Below, piece after piece: positions 1,934 to 63,061 of a DNA stretch of 64,000 nucleotides (its first letter is position 1; each line of letters opens with the position of its first letter). The notes below the pieces were generated by a model, which was not told the origin of the DNA, ran no database searches, and saw only the letters and a list, made by a program, of their open reading frames with translations. The DNA lies in the IMG/VR virus record IMGVR_UViG_3300044712_002668, positions 124,001 to 188,000 of that record. One strand, given 5' to 3'. A program made the translations under genes and the position numbers.

Positions 1934-2910
1934 CAAGAGTTATATATGCTCCGATTAATTTTGGTGATGTAGTACAAGACGGTGTTTACGATGCCTTTAG
2001 ACAAGCCGGTTGTGACTTGAATGTGTTTGATTATGTTCATAAACACTTATCAACCGGTCAGAATGATCATAGGGTTAGAGAAGAATTCTTGGATAATATA
2101 AAAAGATTTCAGCCAGATGTTGCTTTTTTACAAATTCAACATATGGGGATTATAGATGGGGAGACTATTAGACGGGCCAAGGATCTTTGTCGTAAGTGTA
2201 TTATGGTGAATTGGACGGGGGATGTAAGAAATTATGTTCCTGTTACTTACAGGCAAGCAGCTCAATATTGTGATTATAATATGATATCTTCAACTGGTCA
2301 GATAAAAACATTTGAAGAAATTATCGGTAAGAAAATTAGTTATTTACAAATAGGTTATAATCCAAAACTTTACTATCCTAGAGCTGAACAACCAAAAGAA
2401 TTTAAGTATGACTGTACTTTTATTGGGCATTATAATCCACGTGAAAATTACCCAGGAACTACGGTTAGAGAAAAGGCGTGTGAAATAATGCACCGTGAAT
2501 TTAGAGAGAGGTTTGGTTTGTTTGGTAGTGCTTGGCCTCCTCAATTTTGTAGTAAGGGATCTGTAGATCAAAGATCTTTAATTAATATTTATCATGATAG
2601 TGTTTGTAATGTTAGTATTAGTCATTATAATGATTTGAATCATTATTTTTCAGATAGACTTCTGATGTGTATGGCGAGTGGTAGGCCAACGATTTCTTTA
2701 ACCTTCCCAGGATGGGAAAGTTATTTTACAAATAATACAGATCTTGTTATGGTATCTTCTGTTGAAGAAATTCCAAATAAAATAAGATGGTTGAAAAATA
2801 ATCCTGATATGGCTAATTTTATAGGCACACAAGGCGCTGTGAAAGTAAAACATGAACATACGTATTTTACCATGGTAAAAAAGCTTTTAAATATTATAGG
2901 AATAATATGA
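1930..2910 (+). CDS. Glycosyltransferase, CgeB/YkvP-like (GT-B)
   Basis: WTGDVR, 'YDCTFIG', 'SDRLLMCMASG', 'HTY' C-terminus; ATGA overlap with the upstream stop. Confidence 0.7.
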   Translation: MTRVIYAPINFGDVVQDGVYDAFRQAGCDLNVFDYVHKHLSTGQNDHRVREEFLDNIKRFQPDVAFLQIQHMGIIDGETIRRAKDLCRKCIMVNWTGDVRNYVPVTYRQAAQYCDYNMISSTGQIKTFEEIIGKKISYLQIGYNPKLYYPRAEQPKEFKYDCTFIGHYNPRENYPGTTVREKACEIMHREFRERFGLFGSAWPPQFCSKGSVDQRSLINIYHDSVCNVSISHYNDLNHYFSDRLLMCMASGRPTISLTFPGWESYFTNNTDLVMVSSVEEIPNKIRWLKNNPDMANFIGTQGAVKVKHEHTYFTMVKKLLNIIGII

Positions 2911-51576: not shown

Positions 51577-53082
51577 ATGTCAAAAGATAAAGTTAAGACG
51601 GAAGATAAGCCTCTTATTCCAGAAGGTAAATATGATGTTACCGATGTCAAAGAATTGAACTTCTTTGATCTATCTGGAGAAAAGGCAAAAACAAAAGGTA
51701 CTTCTAATAAGTTTTATCATGCCGAAATCCAGAAAGAAAAATCTGGAACTCGTGTTCAGCTATATACTATGTACGGTGCCACTGGAAAAGTACAAGCCAG
51801 GGAGTGGCGGTATTTTTCAGATGAGCTTGCTGCCAAGAAAGAATTCAATAGAATTATTTCCAGCAAACTAAAAAAAGGATATGTAGAGATTGATGTAGCT
51901 CAAAGAGCTTTAGGATCTGATTCTGCTAAACAGATAACCAAACCAGTTGTTTTGGCAAATGCAGATCATCTTGTTACGCCTGTTTCTTCAAAGCTTGATG
52001 CTGGACAAAAAAGAATTGTTGAAATATTCTTTGGAAGTCAGGATCATTTCGTAGCTACCACTCTTAAATGTCCACTAGGACAGCTATCAAATACACAGAT
52101 AGATAAAGGCCGTGACGTTCTAAATCAAGCCAAAGATATTGTAAATAGTGGTAGTATTGATAAGAATAAGCTTACTGATTTAACCAATCAATTTTACGGC
52201 TTGATTCCACATAATCTAGGAGGAGGGGCTAGAGGTCAGATGACCGAGCTTCTTCTTGATACTCTTCCAAAGATTGTGGGAAAGGAAAGCGATCTTGATA
52301 CCTTGCTTGATGCGAAGCAAGTCAATGCTGTTTTGAAATCCGATTCAACTATTGATACAAAGTATGATAGTTTGAATTGTGATTTCCTTTCAGTAGATCC
52401 TTCTAGTGATATTTTCAAATTTATGTCCTCGTATTTTCAGGATACAAAAGTACGTGGACATGGTTATGATAAAGAGCGTGTAGTAAATATTTGGGAAATG
52501 AACCGCAAGGATGATAAAGAAAAAGCATTCTTGAAGAATACTGATATAATTGCAAAGCAATGTGGTAAACATTCCTTTGTTTCTGAAACTGAACGTTTAT
52601 CAGGTGGGAAGAATAAGCTGTGGACTCCTGATAAGCGTCCTGATTTAGATAAAGATTTGGTAAAGCTATATACCAATGCAAATGTTTGGTTGTGTTGGCA
52701 TGGAACCAGATCTGCTAATCTGGTTGGTATTACCAGGCGTGGTTTGTTGATTAGACCATCTGGAGCTGTGTATACTGGATCCATGTTTGGAGATGGTAAG
52801 TATTTTGCCTGGCAAAGTACAAAGTCTTTGAACTATACAGATGGTGGATATTGGACTGGAGGTAGACATAATGTATCTTCCAGGTTTATGTTTATCATGG
52901 ATGTTGCTATGGGTAAGCAACACATCTCTCATAATTCACACTTTTTCAAAAAACCACCAGCCGGATTTCATTCTGTATATGGTAAGGCAGGCTCTGGCTT
53001 GTGGAATGATGAAATGATTACATACGATTTTGATGATAAGGATAATCAGTCTGCAATAAGATACTTGTTGGAAATCGTTTAA
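51577..53082 (+). CDS. Poly(ADP-ribose) polymerase-like: WGR + regulatory + catalytic domain
   Basis: WGR-like 'SNKFY...YG.TG...K.KKGY'; regulatory 'CPLGQLS..QI..G...L', 'LTNQFYGLIPH'; catalytic H-Y-E triad WHGTR / MFGDGKYFA / NDEMITY. Confidence 0.9.
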   Translation: MSKDKVKTEDKPLIPEGKYDVTDVKELNFFDLSGEKAKTKGTSNKFYHAEIQKEKSGTRVQLYTMYGATGKVQAREWRYFSDELAAKKEFNRIISSKLKKGYVEIDVAQRALGSDSAKQITKPVVLANADHLVTPVSSKLDAGQKRIVEIFFGSQDHFVATTLKCPLGQLSNTQIDKGRDVLNQAKDIVNSGSIDKNKLTDLTNQFYGLIPHNLGGGARGQMTELLLDTLPKIVGKESDLDTLLDAKQVNAVLKSDSTIDTKYDSLNCDFLSVDPSSDIFKFMSSYFQDTKVRGHGYDKERVVNIWEMNRKDDKEKAFLKNTDIIAKQCGKHSFVSETERLSGGKNKLWTPDKRPDLDKDLVKLYTNANVWLCWHGTRSANLVGITRRGLLIRPSGAVYTGSMFGDGKYFAWQSTKSLNYTDGGYWTGGRHNVSSRFMFIMDVAMGKQHISHNSHFFKKPPAGFHSVYGKAGSGLWNDEMITYDFDDKDNQSAIRYLLEIV

Positions 53083-56649: not shown

Positions 56650-56708
56650 ATTCAATGTCGAGCAGGCTGCTGAAAAGGACTCCCATAACCAAAGGAGTCC
56701 TTTTCATT

Positions 56709-57347
56709 ATGTCCATAATTTTTTACGTTCTAGATACAGAAACGACAGGTTTGAAAACTGGATGGCATGAAATCAATCAAATATCAGTTCTTAACTCTGC
56801 ATCAAAAGATCAGATAACAATTGATATATGTGTTGACTACCCCGAAAGGGCTTCCAAAGAAGCCTTGGAAGTTCAAGGCAAATCAGTCCATGATCTGGAT
56901 AATGGAATTTCTCTGAAAGATGCAGTCATTCAAGTTAATGAATTCTTTCAGAAAGATAATTCAAATAAAGCTGCCAGGTGTATTGTGGCTCACAATGCTC
57001 CTTTTGATCGTAAATTTTGCCACTCAGCTTGGGACTCTGTTGAGTTGGAATTTCCTGCCGATTTGTGGATTTGTACCAAACAGTTGGCTCAAAGATATGT
57101 TAAAAAGTATGGTGGAGAAAAAATAGCTCAAGCTCAAAGCTCCCCGAAACCAAAGTTCGGTTTGAACAACTTCCTTCAAGGGGTAGGAATTACTCCAAAA
57201 TTAGGAGCACACCGTGCTGATACAGATACAATCAATACTCTTGAACTTTTCAATTGGTTGCTAAACTCTCAAACAGAATATGTTTCTCTTATCGAACGTA
57301 TCCCTCATAAAAAAGAAAACGTTAAAGATTTATTAGATTCTTATTAA
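56709..57347 (+). CDS. Second DEDDh 3'-5' exonuclease
   Basis: LDTETTG, AHNAPFD, AHRADTD; AGGAG upstream of MSIIF. Confidence 0.85.
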   Translation: MSIIFYVLDTETTGLKTGWHEINQISVLNSASKDQITIDICVDYPERASKEALEVQGKSVHDLDNGISLKDAVIQVNEFFQKDNSNKAARCIVAHNAPFDRKFCHSAWDSVELEFPADLWICTKQLAQRYVKKYGGEKIAQAQSSPKPKFGLNNFLQGVGITPKLGAHRADTDTINTLELFNWLLNSQTEYVSLIERIPHKKENVKDLLDSY

Positions 57348-57731: not shown

Positions 57732-59327
57732 ATGTCTAGCGCAAAGTTTGTACAGCAAGTTATTGGTAACGATCCAAACCGTAAGGTTATCAAGATTGAT
57801 TCTTATTTGTCAGCTAACGAGACTGCTGAAGAGGCAGTGGCTCGTGTATTGCTGACTGGTATTTTGAAGAATCAATTCTATCGTTCGGTAGATGATATTA
57901 CAAAGGAAGCCCTACCTCTTGTAGAGAATATGGCAGATAGCAATCCTGAATATCTGCTTAAGGCGGCTTGTATTGCTCGTAATAGCCATATGAAGGGTAT
58001 GGTCAAGGTTGCCATTGCAGCAATCAACGGGCATGCAAATGATACTTTCTTGAATCGTGATGAGATCAAGGAAGCTATTGTTTCTTTGTTAGCAACATTC
58101 CATCCTGGTCAGTTGATTCAGTTTGTGGAACTGTGCAAGTCCAAGAAGTTTGGGCGTGGATTTGGTTCCAGACCCCAGAAGTGGGTTCGTTCTGCCATGG
58201 AGCGTTGGAATGCGTGGAAGCTTGAGGAGAATACCCTTAAGTATCCAACAGCATTGAATCAACTTGTACGTTTGGTTCATCCACGTTTCAAGGATGAGCG
58301 TGCTGGATTGGTATTGTACGTTCTTGATGGCAAGAAGTCTGAAGCAACTGGTGCTAAGCAGAAGGTTGTGGAAACTTTAAAGGCTGACACTTCTGATAAG
58401 AAGAAGATTGCCAATGCCATCTTGGATCATAAGATTCCATGGGATGTTATCAAGGGTTTTGCAGGCTTGGATGGTCCTATTGCCATGGCTGCAATGACTC
58501 AAATGGGATTGACGGCTTTATTGCTTAATATCCGTTCTTTGGAAGAGCATAATGTTTTCTCTACCACAGATGGATTGAGGGCTCTAAGCCTCAAGATGGA
58601 TGAGGTCAAGGATGGTCGTGCCATTCCTATGGACTTTGCAAAGCCATATATCTACGCTACCAATAGCAAGGTAAAAGATATCTTGCTGGATGCGATGGTA
58701 TCTACTCTTGATGTACCAATGCCTGCTATCGAAGGTAGGAAGGTTGGTGTGTCTGTTGATATCTCTGGTTCTATGGCCGGTGAAACTCTTAAAACTGCCG
58801 GTCTTCTTGCAGTTCCTTTCCTGAAGGCAAATGATTTGTGGTTTACTACTTTTGATACTTCATTGTATGAAGAGGGTAATACCATTAATCAGGGACGTAG
58901 GGATTTTTGGGGTTATTCCTCAAATGGTTTCTGTCCTAAGTTGAAGGGTAGGAGTCGCAAAGATCAAGTGAAGTCTTTGCTTGATTTGAAGACCGCTGGT
59001 GGAACCGATGTCTCCCAGCCAATTGTTCATGCAATTGCTTCACAAAGGTTTTTGGATGTTATGGTGCTTATCACCGATGAGCAGCAGAATGCCGGAACTC
59101 CTTTGATGAGGGTTTGGAATGAGTATTTGGCAAAGGTAAACCCAAGAGCCCATCTTTGGGTAATCAATGCCACAAATTCAAACTGGCATGCTGCAGATTT
59201 TGGTCATAGGAATGTTACAGTGTATCAGACTATGACCCCAGCATTATTCAAGAATCTTGAATACGTTGGTCAGGACTTGGTCAAAGCCATCAAAGACTTT
59301 GATTTCAAGGATGTTGGGAAGCGTTAG
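57732..59327 (+). CDS. Ro60/Rsr-like TROVE domain RNA-binding protein with vWA domain
   Basis: 'LLTG....QFY', 'GRGFGSRPQK....', 'LKYP...LVRLVHP', 'IPW', 'MGLTALLLNI..L'; vWA MIDAS DISGSM, GGTD, LITDEQ; AGGAGG RBS. Confidence 0.9.
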   Translation: MSSAKFVQQVIGNDPNRKVIKIDSYLSANETAEEAVARVLLTGILKNQFYRSVDDITKEALPLVENMADSNPEYLLKAACIARNSHMKGMVKVAIAAINGHANDTFLNRDEIKEAIVSLLATFHPGQLIQFVELCKSKKFGRGFGSRPQKWVRSAMERWNAWKLEENTLKYPTALNQLVRLVHPRFKDERAGLVLYVLDGKKSEATGAKQKVVETLKADTSDKKKIANAILDHKIPWDVIKGFAGLDGPIAMAAMTQMGLTALLLNIRSLEEHNVFSTTDGLRALSLKMDEVKDGRAIPMDFAKPYIYATNSKVKDILLDAMVSTLDVPMPAIEGRKVGVSVDISGSMAGETLKTAGLLAVPFLKANDLWFTTFDTSLYEEGNTINQGRRDFWGYSSNGFCPKLKGRSRKDQVKSLLDLKTAGGTDVSQPIVHAIASQRFLDVMVLITDEQQNAGTPLMRVWNEYLAKVNPRAHLWVINATNSNWHAADFGHRNVTVYQTMTPALFKNLEYVGQDLVKAIKDFDFKDVGKR

Positions 59328-60274: not shown

Positions 60275-60303
60275 TTGACAGGCTGGGTGAGACAGGTTAG
60301 ACT
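60275..60303 (+). promoter_or_regulatory. Sigma70-type promoter for the small-RNA/tRNA cluster
   Basis: TTGACA-N17-TAGACT. Confidence 0.7.
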
Positions 60304-60340
60304 GGGTGAGTTCGGTTGGCTTTCTAAACCATCCGAGCAC

Positions 60341-60457
60341 TGGTAAACGCGCCGTAGACGTTTCATCATCAATCAACGATTCTAGGTGGTTCGAATCCAC
60401 CAGACGGGCTTGGTAACGGGGAAACCCGGCCTATTCGTCTGCATCTTTCGTTTACCA
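60341..60457 (+). ncRNA. Y-RNA-like RNA 1 (contains a tRNA T-arm)
   Basis: TGGTAAACG/CGTTTACCA helix, GTAGACG/CGTCTGC helix, TTTCATCA linker, GGTGG-TTCGAAT-CCACC T-arm, CGGG-GAAA-CCCG. Confidence 0.7.
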
Positions 60458-60496
60458 ATTTTATTCCTATCATTATGTAAAAGTGATGGTAGGGGC

Positions 60497-60570
60497 TATT
60501 GAACGCGCTAGCTGATCTTTCATCAATATTGCTAATTGAACCTGTGGGTCAGCGTAATTTTCGTTCAATA
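60497..60570 (+). ncRNA. Y-RNA-like RNA 2
   Basis: TATTGAACG/CGTTCAATA, GCTGATC/GGTCAGC, TTTCATCA, 5-bp stem with 7-nt loop ATTGCTA. Confidence 0.7.
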
Positions 60571-60643
60571 TTTTTTTTATTCATGGAATAAGGTGATATA
60601 TAAATGAATATGAATTTGTCAGCTCGAATATGAACGCCCATTT

Positions 60644-60724
60644 GGGGCGTGAGGCATCTGGTAGAGGCCGCCAGTCTTATAAACTGGGAAGATAACGAGC
60701 AGAGTTCAAATCTCTGACGCCCCA
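60644..60724 (+). tRNA. tRNA-Ile(UAU)
   Basis: Acceptor GGGGCGT/ACGCCCC-A, anticodon arm CCAGT-CTTATAA-ACTGG, T-arm CAGAG-TTCAAAT-CTCTG; long variable region; no encoded CCA. Confidence 0.8.
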
Positions 60725-60747
60725 CTGGGTATAGTGAAAATTTAATA

Positions 60748-60819
60748 CGGGGTATAGGACAGAGGTAGTCCGCTAGTTTTGGGAACTAGAAGTCGCTGGT
60801 TCAAATCCAGCTACCCCGA
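60748..60819 (+). tRNA. tRNA-Pro(UGG)
   Basis: CGGGGTA/TACCCCG-A, D-arm GGAC/GTCC, CTAGT-TTTGGGA-ACTAG, GCTGG-TTCAAAT-CCAGC. Confidence 0.92.
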
Positions 60820-60821
60820 CA

Positions 60822-60898
60822 GATAACGCGATACAATATCTTTCATCATAATAATTGGGATATTACACGAAAACAAGGTATTGTTAATTTTCGTTATC
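60822..60898 (+). ncRNA. Y-RNA-like RNA 3
   Basis: GATAACG/CGTTATC, ACAATATC/GGTATTGT, TTTCATCA, 5-bp stem with 7-nt loop ATTGGGA. Confidence 0.7.
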
Positions 60899-60903
60899 AA
60901 CTT

Positions 60904-60927
60904 AAACCACCTTTTGGTGGTTTTTTT
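60904..60927 (+). terminator. Terminator of the RNA cluster
   Basis: AAACCACC-tttt-GGTGGTTTTTTT. Confidence 0.8.
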
Positions 60928-60967
60928 GTTTTAAGGGAATATTTTTGCTTATAGGTGGCAGGTAAAT

Positions 60968-62945: not shown

Positions 62946-63061
62946 ATAAGCGGAACGCGAGTTTAGAATCACCATTAGTATAATGGCAGTACGGTACTCA
63001 TATGAGTACCAGTGCAGGTTCGAATCCTGTAGGTGATTTATACAAATTTCGTTCCGCTTAT
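62946..63061 (+). ncRNA. Y-RNA-like RNA 4 (YrlA-like architecture, with a tRNA-like domain)
   Basis: 12-bp ATAAGCGGAACG/CGTTCCGCTTAT, AATCACC/GGTGATT acceptor-like helix, D-like GTAT-AATGGCA-GTAC, palindromic GGTACTCATATGAGTACC arm, T-arm GCAGG-TTCGAAT-CCTGT. Confidence 0.8.

What the first reader, a model, noticed from the sequence alone, without database searches (positions are those of the whole stretch)
60310..60870. Anticodon-like stem-loops displayed inside and between the Y-like RNAs
Right after the TTTCA(TCA) linker, RNA 3 has TAATA-ATTGGGA-TATTA (5 bp plus a 7-nt loop, U33, UGG). This nearly copies the TTTGGGA loop of the adjacent tRNA-Pro. RNA 2 has TCAAT-ATTGCTA-ATTGA (UGC, Ala-like). 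RNA 1 has a weaker ATC-AATCAAC-GAT followed by a perfect T-arm. The first hairpin after the promoter (60310-60338) presents TTTCTAA (UCU, Arg-like). 60468-60488 can fold with loop ATGTAAA (GUA, Tyr-like), although a longer stem with an 8-nt loop competes. The mimics inside the scaffolds have A at position 32 rather than a pyrimidine. Inference: a panel of anticodon decoys or sensors.
Basis: partly seen in the sequence, partly recalled or inferred. Interest (0 to 1): 0.8.

Follow-up and report, generated by a model that had tools for sequence, protein, structure and literature searches.

The report
Anticodon-arm remnants in phage Y RNAs
A giant phage encodes a Ro60 protein and many small Y RNAs built from rearranged tRNAs, and the "anticodon-like" hairpins are most likely leftover tRNA anticodon arms, with no evidence yet that they act as decoys.

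Summary
The three hairpins inside the Y-like RNAs exist as described. RNA2's is robust (pair probability about 0.9), RNA3's is ambiguous (about 0.4) and RNA1's is weak (about 0.2). The two hairpins between the RNAs do not have 7-nt loops. The RNAs belong to an undescribed Y-RNA family next to a Ro60 gene in megaphages. About 68 members were collected. The scaffold covaries strongly, and UUCAUC is invariant. A 7-nt loop closed by the invariant AUC does recur (11 of 58, against 1.4 expected). In at least seven full-size members, ARAGORN reads the circularised module as a complete tRNA whose anticodon lies in this hairpin; shuffled controls gave 0 of 1173 calls. These members are therefore circularly permuted tRNAs that keep an anticodon arm, unlike the known YrlA. 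Matches to neighbouring tRNA anticodon loops are not above chance. The decoy/sensor idea remains untested.

The parts
56655..57347 (+). RNase T-like DEDD 3'-5' exonuclease gene. An exonuclease of this family lies upstream of Ro60 in most relatives whose upstream genes were listed. It is a candidate effector.
   Evidence: Pfam RNase_T and phrog_192. An RNase_T gene lies upstream of Ro60 in L047-L052 and L071-L073, with one to several genes between them; none is listed in L074.
57732..59327 (+). Ro60/Rsr-like protein gene (531 aa).
   Evidence: Pfam vWA_Ro60 and phrog_850. A profile of 33 homologues hits D. radiodurans Rsr 2nvo at E 2e-18, and human and Xenopus Ro60.
60275..60303 (+). Sigma-70-like promoter (TTGACA-17-TAGACT) of the RNA operon.
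   Evidence: This is a consensus match only.
60310..60338 (+). 5' leader hairpin with a 9-nt loop. It is not anticodon-like.
   Evidence: A related phage carries this hairpin duplicated (27-nt insertion) with two substitutions, one of them in the loop.
60341..60457 (+). Y-like RNA 1. It has the scaffold plus a reduced tRNA-like module: a 3-bp/7-nt hairpin at 60368-60380, a 4-nt linker, a T arm at 60385-60401, and a D-loop-like UUGGUAA bulge.
   Evidence: CM hit of 40.9 bits; folds. ARAGORN does not call it a permuted tRNA. The hairpin is not kept in the closest orthologue, L018:6757-6873.
60464..60495 (+). Spacer hairpin between RNA1 and RNA2 (13 bp, 6-nt loop). It is not anticodon-like.
60497..60570 (+). 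Y-like RNA 2 (short type), with UUUCAUC at 60518-60524 and a 5-bp/7-nt hairpin at 60523-60539 (loop AUUGCUA).
   Evidence: CM hit of 53.4 bits; pair probabilities 0.89-0.97.
60644..60725 (+). tRNA-Ile(UAU), 82 nt, with a 13-nt variable region.
   Evidence: ARAGORN; Rfam tRNA 41.7 bits.
60748..60820 (+). tRNA-Pro(UGG), anticodon loop UUUGGGA, with no encoded CCA. RNA3 starts 1 nt after its 3' end.
60822..60898 (+). Y-like RNA 3 (short type), with UUUCAUC at 60841-60847 and a possible 5-bp/7-nt hairpin at 60849-60865 (loop AUUGGGA).
   Evidence: CM hit of 53.2 bits; pair probabilities about 0.42, with a competing register.
60904..60933 (+). Intrinsic terminator-like hairpin plus a T run at the end of the RNA operon.
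62951..63056 (+). Fourth Y-like RNA. A non-permuted tRNA-like cloverleaf sits on the ACGCG/UUUCGUU stem. Its 'anticodon arm' is 7 bp with a 4-nt loop.
   Evidence: CM hits of 21-26 bits; ARAGORN 'tRNA-???' at 62967-63039; fold.

Best explanation
The region is an operon of small RNAs from a roughly 455-kb megaphage. It holds three Y-like RNAs and two tRNAs, and lies downstream of a Ro60 gene.

All Y-like RNAs share one scaffold:
- a terminal stem ending in ..AACG/CGUU..;
- a conserved internal loop, CG(N) opposite a U-rich UUUUCGU;
- a second stem;
- then the invariant UUCAUC.

The scaffold is inferred to bind Ro60. On top of it sits a variable module derived from tRNA. In full-size family members this module is a whole circularly permuted tRNA, in the order anticodon arm, variable loop, T arm, closed acceptor stem, D arm. 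The permutation opens between the D and anticodon arms, and the CAUC of the motif forms the 5' strand of the anticodon stem.

The window's hairpins are reduced versions of that arm. RNA1 keeps a 3-bp remnant plus the T arm and a D-loop-like bulge. RNAs 2 and 3 keep only one hairpin of anticodon-arm size, in a shifted register and with A32.

Inferred mechanism:
- The transcript is cut at the tRNA ends by RNase P and 3' processing enzymes, which also releases the Y RNAs.
- The Y RNAs load onto phage Ro60.
- Their tRNA-like tops tether Ro60 to proteins that handle tRNA. Candidates are the RNase T-like exonuclease, the CCA-adding enzyme, the kinase-like and metallo-beta-lactamase-fold proteins encoded nearby in relatives, or host PNPase.
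- The complex would serve tRNA and RNA surveillance during infection.

Shown here: the family, the scaffold, the permuted-tRNA architecture, and the adjacency to tRNAs and Ro60. Inferred: Ro60 binding, processing and tethering.
For: - Ro60 identity.
- Family: 59 non-redundant members in 18 loci, plus 9 more in hold-out loci.
- Scaffold covariation: 92.9% of cells paired, 124 compensatory cells, 0 of 500 shuffles as high, and slid controls at 32-53% paired.
- UUCAUC is invariant apart from the first base.
- ATC-N7-GAT occurs in 11 of 58 RNAs against 1.4 expected (0 of 2000 shuffles), while other spacings sit at background. In three RNAs a duplicated ATC keeps the 7-nt spacing.
- Hairpins with at least 5 bp and a 7-nt loop: 10 against 4.1 +- 1.9 (P 0.003). 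With at least 4 bp: 22 against 11.9 (P 0.002).
- ARAGORN on circularised modules calls tRNAs that span the junction, with the anticodon in the CAUC hairpin: Thr 40 constructs, Ile 19, Leu 17, Asn 16, Asn 14, Gly 12, Ile 7, Thr 3. It made 0 calls in 1173 shuffled controls, and the cloverleaves were inspected.
- The loop CUGUUAA occurs three times on three different stems, against 0.32 expected.
- Gaps: tRNA 3' end to Y 5' end, median 1 nt (15 cases); Y 3' end to tRNA 5' end, median 6 nt (13 cases).
- Synteny with RNase_T, PolyA_pol/CCA-adding, AAA_33 and Lactamase_B_2 genes.
- Literature: YrlA is a permuted-tRNA-like Y RNA with a closed acceptor stem, thought to bind a tRNA-recognising effector. 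M. smegmatis YrlA is cut by RNase P and receives CCA (PMC4201824; 10.1101/312249). A phage Ro60 binds phage Y-like RNAs and host PNPase (PMC12135203).
Against: - No expression or binding data: no RNA run was listed.
- ARAGORN does not call window RNA1 a permuted tRNA, and its closest orthologue lacks the hairpin.
- The hairpins of RNAs 2 and 3 are not in the CAUCN register of the permuted tRNAs, and no orthologue with the same hairpin was found. Their homology to anticodon arms therefore rests on position and size only.
- The 5' Ro-binding motif (AACGCG) differs from the published GNCGAAN0-1G.
- No Rfam family other than tRNA matches.
- A test using the MFE structure of the isolated apical parts shows no excess of 7-nt loops.
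- Part of the YU-NNN-RA signal comes from the T-rich to A-rich composition gradient.
- Which helix stacks on the D arm, the scaffold or the CAUC hairpin, cannot be decided without a structure.
Confidence: 0.55

Rival explanations
1. The anticodon-arm hairpins are functional mimics displayed on a Ro60 scaffold. They would serve as decoys or sponges for host anticodon nucleases, or as sensors whose cleavage is detected. They might also be substrates or competitors for enzymes that read anticodon loops, such as Tgt, TrmD or aminoacyl-tRNA synthetases.
For: - Permuted-tRNA members keep canonical anticodon-loop features although the acceptor is closed. Of 10 loops, 10 have R37, 8 have A38 and 8 have Y32.
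- The identical loop CUGUUAA sits on three different stems, which suggests selection on the loop sequence.
- Closed 7-nt loops matching NU-NNN-RA occur in 17 RNAs against 2.2 in shuffles.
- Triplets differ among the 13 or more copies in one genome.
- The neighbourhood is rich in RNA processing and repair genes.
- Ro60/Y RNA operons are linked to tRNA damage in Salmonella (PMC7790460).
Against: - Most short members lack the hairpin.
- U33 is present in only about 6 of 10 loops.
- The window's own three have A32, and one has U37.
- Some triplets (UUA, UCA) match no ordinary tRNA.
- Matches to neighbouring tRNAs are at chance.
- One tRNA-like member has a tetraloop in place of the anticodon loop.
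- No nuclease, modification or competition data exist.
Confidence: 0.2
2. The hairpins of window RNAs 2 and 3, and the 3-bp one in RNA1, are fortuitous or neutral features of a fast-evolving AT-rich apical loop. Only the scaffold and UUCAUC matter.
For: - Shuffled apical parts give such a hairpin in 5-8% of trials.
- RNA3's hairpin is all A-U with a competing register, and RNA1's has p about 0.2.
- Close relatives (Ro60 about 68% identical) carry different apical parts.
- Many members have plain 12-25-nt loops.
- The MFE-based test shows no 7-nt excess.
Against: There is a family-level excess of 7-nt loops, and specifically of ATC-N7-GAT. The same position is a true anticodon arm in the permuted-tRNA members.
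Confidence: 0.2
3. The long members are precursors of working tRNAs. Opening the closed acceptor loop by RNase P and RNase Z, followed by CCA addition, would give a two-piece tRNA held together by the scaffold helix that can be charged and decode.
For: - The permuted modules have 7-bp acceptor stems, U8, D and T loops and full anticodon arms.
- A CCA-adding enzyme gene is syntenic in relatives.
- M. smegmatis YrlA is cut by RNase P and receives CCA (PMC4201824).
- Permuted tRNA genes are processed to tRNAs in some algae (cited in 10.1101/312249).
Against: A long helix would remain inserted at position 26. The anticodon stems carry an A-C mismatch, and several loops lack U33. The short members cannot do this. 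There are no data.
Confidence: 0.05

Closest known systems
YrlA (bacterial and phage Y RNA-like A; Salmonella, Mycobacterium)
   Same: Encoded near Ro60. The 5' and 3' ends form a long stem with a conserved internal-loop motif. [quoted passage not shown]
   Different: - The conserved 5' motif here is AACGCG, not GNCGAAN0-1G.
- UUCAUC is an additional invariant motif.
- The permutation point lies between the D and anticodon arms, so a separate 5-bp/7-nt anticodon arm is kept. YrlA 'lacks the anticodon loop', and its anticodon stem leads into the Ro module.
- There are 13 or more copies per genome, interleaved one-to-one with tRNA genes.
- No Rfam family other than tRNA matches.
Short Y RNAs without a tRNA-like domain (Salmonella YrlB; Thermus phage phiLo Yrl1/Yrl2)
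   Same: Stem-bulge-stem RNAs encoded beside Ro60 that carry only a small apical loop or hairpin, like window RNAs 2 and 3. phiLo Yrls bind phage Ro60 and host PNPase (PMC12135203).
   Different: The conserved motifs differ (CGAA there). The apical part here begins with CAUC and sometimes forms a hairpin of anticodon-arm size.
Deinococcus radiodurans Yrn1
   Same: A Y RNA drawn with a T arm and a potential 'anticodon arm' with a 5-bp stem (PMC4201824).
   Different: Its loop is 6 nt, the orientation is not permuted, and it has no V arm. It is a single gene, not an array.
Circularly permuted tRNA genes (Cyanidioschyzon merolae and others)
   Same: The order of tRNA parts is permuted in the gene, and the acceptor stem is closed by a loop in the primary transcript (as summarised in 10.1101/312249).
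   Different: Those are processed via a circular intermediate into ordinary tRNAs. Here the ends form a conserved Ro60-type scaffold, and no processing is known.
Phage tRNAs that counter tRNA-targeting host defences (from my own knowledge, not tested here)
   Same: Phage-encoded tRNA-shaped RNAs in arrays, and an anticodon loop as the point of conflict.
   Different: Those are working tRNAs that replace cleaved host tRNAs. The RNAs here have no free acceptor end.

Membership tests
Y RNA (Ro60-associated) | Encoded next to a Ro60/Rsr (TROVE) gene | tested here: met
   The Ro60 gene ends at 59327 and the RNAs start at 60341. The same adjacency holds in 18 or more loci.
Y RNA (Ro60-associated) | The 5' and 3' ends pair into a long stem interrupted by a conserved bulge or internal loop | tested here: met
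   Two helices with 92.9% of cells paired, 124 compensatory cells, and 0 of 500 shuffles as high.
Y RNA (Ro60-associated) | Published Ro-binding motif on the 5' strand (GGUCCGA in animals; GNCGAAN0-1G in bacteria) | tested here: not met
   The invariant 5' motif is (A)ACGCG, which is a different sequence. Whether it binds Ro60 is untested.
Y RNA (Ro60-associated) | Physical binding to Ro60 | not testable with these tools
   Needs RIP, EMSA or a structure.
YrlA subfamily | tRNA-like domain with conserved T and D stem-loops and a closed acceptor stem | tested here: met
   Met for at least seven relatives. Window RNA1 has the T arm and a D-loop-like bulge only. RNAs 2 and 3 lack the domain.
YrlA subfamily | The anticodon-stem equivalent is formed by the 5' and 3' strands and leads to the Ro module; there is no anticodon loop | tested here: inconclusive
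   A separate hairpin with a 7-nt loop, followed by a 4-5-nt linker and the T arm, is read by ARAGORN as the anticodon arm. It could instead be drawn as YrlA's 'V' arm. A 3D structure is needed.
tRNA anticodon stem-loop (mimic) | 5-bp stem closing a 7-nt loop | tested here: inconclusive
   Window: RNA2 yes (p about 0.9), RNA3 ambiguous (about 0.42), RNA1 only 3 bp, and the two inter-RNA hairpins no. Family: 10 RNAs with at least 5 bp and 7 nt, 11 with a 3-bp ATC/GAT stem, and most short members with none.
tRNA anticodon stem-loop (mimic) | U33, pyrimidine 32, purine 37 | tested here: not met
   Window loops: AUUGCUA (A32, U33, U37), AUUGGGA (A32, U33, G37), AAUCAAC (A32, A33, A37). In permuted-tRNA relatives Y32 is 8 of 10, U33 is 6 of 10 and R37 is 10 of 10.
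tRNA anticodon stem-loop (mimic) | Copies the anticodon loop of a particular (neighbouring) tRNA | tested here: not met
   2 of 21 Y RNAs match a neighbour at 6 or more of 7 positions. Permutation P = 0.26, and 0.11 for an exact match.
tRNA (Rfam RF00005 / ARAGORN) | Linear cloverleaf scoring above threshold | tested here: not met
   Window RNAs 1-3 are not called. L059:2233-2306, inside a Y scaffold, scores 47.7 bits.

The most novel reading that the evidence does not exclude
Megaphages display tRNA anticodon arms, with different triplets in different copies, on Ro60-binding Y-RNA scaffolds. The purpose would be to intercept or report factors that read or cut anticodon loops: host anticodon nucleases of anti-phage defence, or anticodon-loop modification enzymes. 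That would make this a panel of RNA decoys or sensors coupled to a Ro60/exonuclease machine.
Probability: 0.2. Interest if true: 0.85.

Novelty: new variant of a known kind. Interest (0 to 1): 0.6.

Why it matters
Y RNAs and Ro60 are conserved from bacteria to humans, yet the partner of the tRNA-like YrlA domain and the purpose of its tRNA mimicry remain unknown.

This megaphage family offers dozens of natural variants on one conserved scaffold. They range from bare loops, through single hairpins of anticodon-arm size, to complete permuted tRNAs that keep an anticodon arm, which the characterised YrlA lacks. The family also sits inside tRNA arrays and next to RNA-processing genes, which suggests that Y-RNA biogenesis is driven by tRNA processing.

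If the arms are read by host or phage factors, this would link Ro60 RNPs to the conflict over tRNA between phages and bacteria. If they are relics, the family still documents how Y RNAs arise from tRNA genes.

Tried and rejected
- Rfam at gathering threshold and at E up to 10 gave only tRNA, with no Y RNA family.
- BLAST against deposited phage genomes found nothing except the tRNA-Pro gene.
- A scan of the genome collection with the Ro60 profile found no relative.
- The first DNA pattern scan gave mostly chance hits.
- 'The loop copies the neighbouring tRNA': 2 of 21 matches, not significant.
- 'The loop is complementary to the neighbouring anticodon loop' (kissing or codon display): not significant, P = 0.42.
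- Loop size of the first MFE hairpin in isolated apical parts showed no 7-nt excess. This test is weak for 3-bp stems.
- U at loop position 2 is enriched in the ATC-N7-GAT class (9 of 11 against 14 of 47). However, 4-5 of those RNAs are probable orthologues, so it was not counted as firm.
- Hold-out replication of ATC-N7-GAT gave 0 of 9 new RNAs. This is compatible with a 19% frequency but does not replicate it.
- No RNA sequencing run was listed.
- Laying DNA contigs of four runs gave only identical copies, plus one variant with a duplicated 5' hairpin.
- ARAGORN on circularised window RNA1 and its orthologues gave no tRNA call.
Full report
**What the locus is.** The window comes from a megaphage contig, IMGVR_UViG_3300044712_002668; the same sequence lies on a 454,833-bp JGI contig. 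The gene at 57732-59327 encodes a Ro60/Rsr-like protein. It matches Pfam vWA_Ro60 and phrog_850. A profile of 33 homologues hits D. radiodurans Rsr (2nvo, E 2e-18) and the vertebrate Ro60 structures.

Downstream, a sigma-70-like promoter (60275-60303) and a terminator-like hairpin (60904-60923) bracket about 630 nt. This stretch holds:
- three RNAs with a common core (60341-60457, 60497-60570, 60822-60898);
- tRNA-Ile(UAU) at 60644-60725;
- tRNA-Pro(UGG) at 60748-60820.

**Check of the observation.** Partition-function folding of each RNA gave these results:
- RNA2: TCAAT/ATTGA, p 0.89-0.97.
- RNA3: TAATA/TATTA, p 0.40-0.44, competing with a 4-bp/6-nt register at 0.37-0.39.
- RNA1: ATC/GAT, p about 0.2. 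Its T arm has p 0.96.
- 5' hairpin: it cannot present TTTCTAA as a 7-nt loop, because the closing pair would be C·A (p = 0). The real loop is 9 nt.
- Spacer hairpin: a 13-bp stem with a 6-nt loop. The 7-nt version has p about 0.

Shuffling the apical part gives a hairpin of at least 5 bp and 7 nt near the motif in 7.9% (RNA2) and 4.6% (RNA3) of trials. So three of the five hairpins are real, only one is robust, and none is significant on its own.

**The family.** Ro60 homologues at 45-70% identity are common in metagenomes, mostly on large phage contigs. I fetched their loci. I then built a covariance model from 13 short members and rebuilt it from the first round of hits.

The model finds 59 non-redundant members in 18 loci, plus 9 more in four hold-out loci. 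The scaffold covaries strongly: 92.9% of cells are paired, with 124 compensatory cells. None of 500 shuffles scored as high, and slid controls gave only 32-53% paired.

The invariant elements are:
- (A)ACGCG on the 5' side;
- UUUCGU(U) on the 3' side;
- UUCAUC after the second stem (33 TTTCATC, 14 ATTCATC, 5 GTTCATC, 4 CTTCATC).

An A-rich tract precedes the 3' strand of stem 2. Neither Rfam (only tRNA hits) nor deposited phage genomes contain the family.

The same genome has a second array outside the window (L059), with at least nine members alternating with tRNA genes. The relative L065 has eight. Y RNAs start a median of 1 nt after the preceding tRNA's 3' end (15 cases) and end a median of 6 nt before the next tRNA (13 cases).

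The test asked whether 5 bp, 7 nt and U33 are conserved while the triplet varies. Family-wide the answer is no.
- Of the short members, about 60% have no 7-nt-loop hairpin. They carry plain 12-25-nt loops starting with CAUC, or hairpins with 3-6-nt loops.
- The MFE structure of the isolated apical parts shows no excess of 7-nt loops.

There is, however, a real signal in a minority.
- ATC-N7-GAT occurs in 11 of 58 RNAs against 1.4 expected (0 of 2000 shuffles), while spacings 3-6 and 8-12 sit at background.
- In three RNAs a duplicated ATC keeps the 7-nt spacing. This argues for pairing rather than for a fixed distance from the motif.
- Hairpins with a 7-nt loop are enriched at both stem thresholds: at least 4 bp, 22 against 11.9 (P 0.002); at least 5 bp, 10 against 4.1 (P 0.003). 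Other loop sizes are near background, with only weak excesses at 8 nt (stems of at least 4 bp, P 0.022) and 6 nt (at least 5 bp, P 0.049).
- The hold-out set had 0 of 9 with ATC-N7-GAT. That is compatible with 19% but does not replicate it.

**What the hairpin is.** In the long members the hairpin that starts at CAUC is followed by a 4-5-nt linker, often AGGUC-like, and then the T arm. That is the tRNA order of anticodon arm, variable loop, T arm.

I circularised the apical modules in silico and ran ARAGORN. It called complete tRNAs that span the junction, with the anticodon in that hairpin:

| RNA | Call | Constructs |
|---|---|---|
| L052:7444 | Thr(UGU) | 40 |
| L059:2410 | Ile(UAU) | 19 |
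| L065:682 | Leu(UAG) | 17 |
| L059:1745 | Asn(GUU) | 16 |
| L074:4678 | Asn(GUU) | 14 |
| L028:3725 | Gly(ACC) | 12 |
| L065:2351 | Ile(GAU) | 7 |
| L065:7571 | Thr(UGU) | 3 |

None of 1173 shuffled controls gave a call. The cloverleaves show a 7-bp acceptor stem, a D arm, a 5-position anticodon stem built from CAUCN (with an A·C mismatch), a 7-nt loop, a variable loop and a T arm.

These members are therefore circularly permuted tRNAs opened between the D and anticodon arms, with the Ro-type scaffold inserted there. Published YrlA RNAs are also permuted-tRNA-like with a closed acceptor. In them, however, the anticodon stem is formed by the two ends and 'YrlA lacks the anticodon loop'; a less-conserved 'V' stem-loop upstream of T was noted (PMC4201824; 10.1101/312249). 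The element here may be that V arm seen in a family where it has kept anticodon-arm features. Only a structure can say which helix stacks on the D arm.

**How anticodon-like the loops are.**
- In ten permuted or T-arm members, R37 is 10 of 10, A38 is 8 of 10, Y32 is 8 of 10 and U33 is 6 of 10.
- CUGUUAA, the loop of the phage's own tRNA-Asn, occurs three times on three different stems, against 0.32 expected.
- Closed 7-nt loops matching YU-NNN-RA occur in 9 RNAs against 1.1 in shuffles, and NU-NNN-RA in 17 against 2.2.
- That null ignores the T-rich to A-rich gradient of the apical part. The signature makes up 4.6% of all apical 7-mers and 11.7% of closed loops.

The window's own three loops have A32. 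RNA1 has A33 and RNA2 has U37.

**Tests of specific ideas.**
- Similarity of Y-RNA loops to the anticodon loop of a flanking tRNA: 2 of 21 at 6 or more of 7 positions. These are window RNA3 with tRNA-Pro, and L059:1745 with tRNA-Asn at 7 of 7. Permutation P = 0.26 and 0.11.
- Complementarity to flanking anticodon loops: P = 0.42.
- The window's fourth Y-like RNA (62951-63056) is a non-permuted cloverleaf on the same stem. Its anticodon arm is 7 bp with a tetraloop.
- L059:2210-2323 is another non-permuted cloverleaf. It scores 47.7 bits as tRNA, has the loop CCUAUAC, and uses UUUCA of the motif as part of its acceptor stem. The motif is therefore conserved for its own sake, not only as an anticodon-stem strand.

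**Context and mechanism.** An RNase T-like exonuclease gene lies upstream of Ro60 in nine of the ten loci whose upstream genes were listed, with one to several genes between them. A CCA-adding-type nucleotidyltransferase, an AAA_33 kinase-like protein and a metallo-beta-lactamase-fold protein are nearby in relatives. The tRNAs lack an encoded CCA.

From this, and from what is known of Y RNAs as tethers and gates for Ro60 (PMC4201824; PMC12135203), I infer three steps:
- tRNA-punctuated processing of the arrays releases the Y RNAs;
- the Y RNAs load onto phage Ro60;
- their tRNA-derived tops recruit tRNA-handling proteins.

No expression data could be obtained. DNA contigs from other samples are identical, except for one relative that carries the 5' hairpin duplicated and with a changed loop.

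**Verdict.** The structural half of the interpretation, that anticodon-like arms are displayed on Y scaffolds, is supported at family level. It is only weakly supported for the window's own hairpins. The functional half, decoys or sensors, is untested and rests on suggestive features only. The family is a new variant of the YrlA kind of Y RNA.

Noticed in passing
window 62951-63056: A fourth Y-like RNA. It has the same ACGCG/UUUCGUU terminal stem but no UUCAUC. It encloses a non-permuted tRNA-like cloverleaf (ARAGORN 'tRNA-???') whose anticodon arm is 7 bp with a 4-nt loop.
   Followed up: partly
L059:1-2800 (same genome, outside the window, minus strand): A second array in which at least nine Y-like RNAs alternate one-to-one with tRNA genes. 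The genome therefore encodes at least 13 Y-like RNAs.
   Followed up: yes
L059:2324-2409, 2126-2209, 1962-2045 (minus strand): Three tRNA-like genes that ARAGORN missed, with anticodon loops CUGAAGA, CUUUUAA and CUCUUAA. Their T loops are unusual (CGCGAAA, AUCGUUA). Only the middle one reaches the Rfam tRNA threshold, at 38.7 bits.
   Followed up: partly
window 60644-60725: tRNA-Ile(UAU) is 82 nt, with a 13-nt variable region that has no obvious stem and an imperfect D stem. Its Rfam score is modest (41.7 bits).
   Followed up: no
window 60569-60643: RNA2's terminal stem is followed by a run of eight T, which may act as a leaky internal terminator. After that comes an AT-rich 68-nt spacer with no significant structure (z = 0.2).
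   Followed up: no
window 60310-60338, and run X5: A related phage in another metagenome carries the 5' leader hairpin as a tandem duplication (27-nt insertion after 60312). It also has substitutions at 60325 (loop) and 60332 (which turns a U-U mismatch into a pair).
   Followed up: partly
window about 51577-53082 (L047:3846-5351): The phage encodes a 501-aa protein with WGR, PARP regulatory and PARP catalytic domains. Just beyond the window there are eIF-1a-like and Macro-domain genes.
   Followed up: no
L071-L074, L048-L051: In relatives, the Ro60 gene's neighbours include a CCA-adding-type nucleotidyltransferase, an AAA_33/KTI12 kinase-like protein, a metallo-beta-lactamase-fold protein, NAPRTase and an ADP-ribosylglycohydrolase. 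IMPDH and ThyX genes with inteins also occur.
   Followed up: no
L050:7400-7950 and L020:6600-6700: Two relatives with an intact Ro60 gene have only degenerate remnants of the Y-like RNAs downstream, for example a lone ...AAATTTCGTTACC 3' end in L020. The arrays are therefore gained and lost quickly.
   Followed up: no
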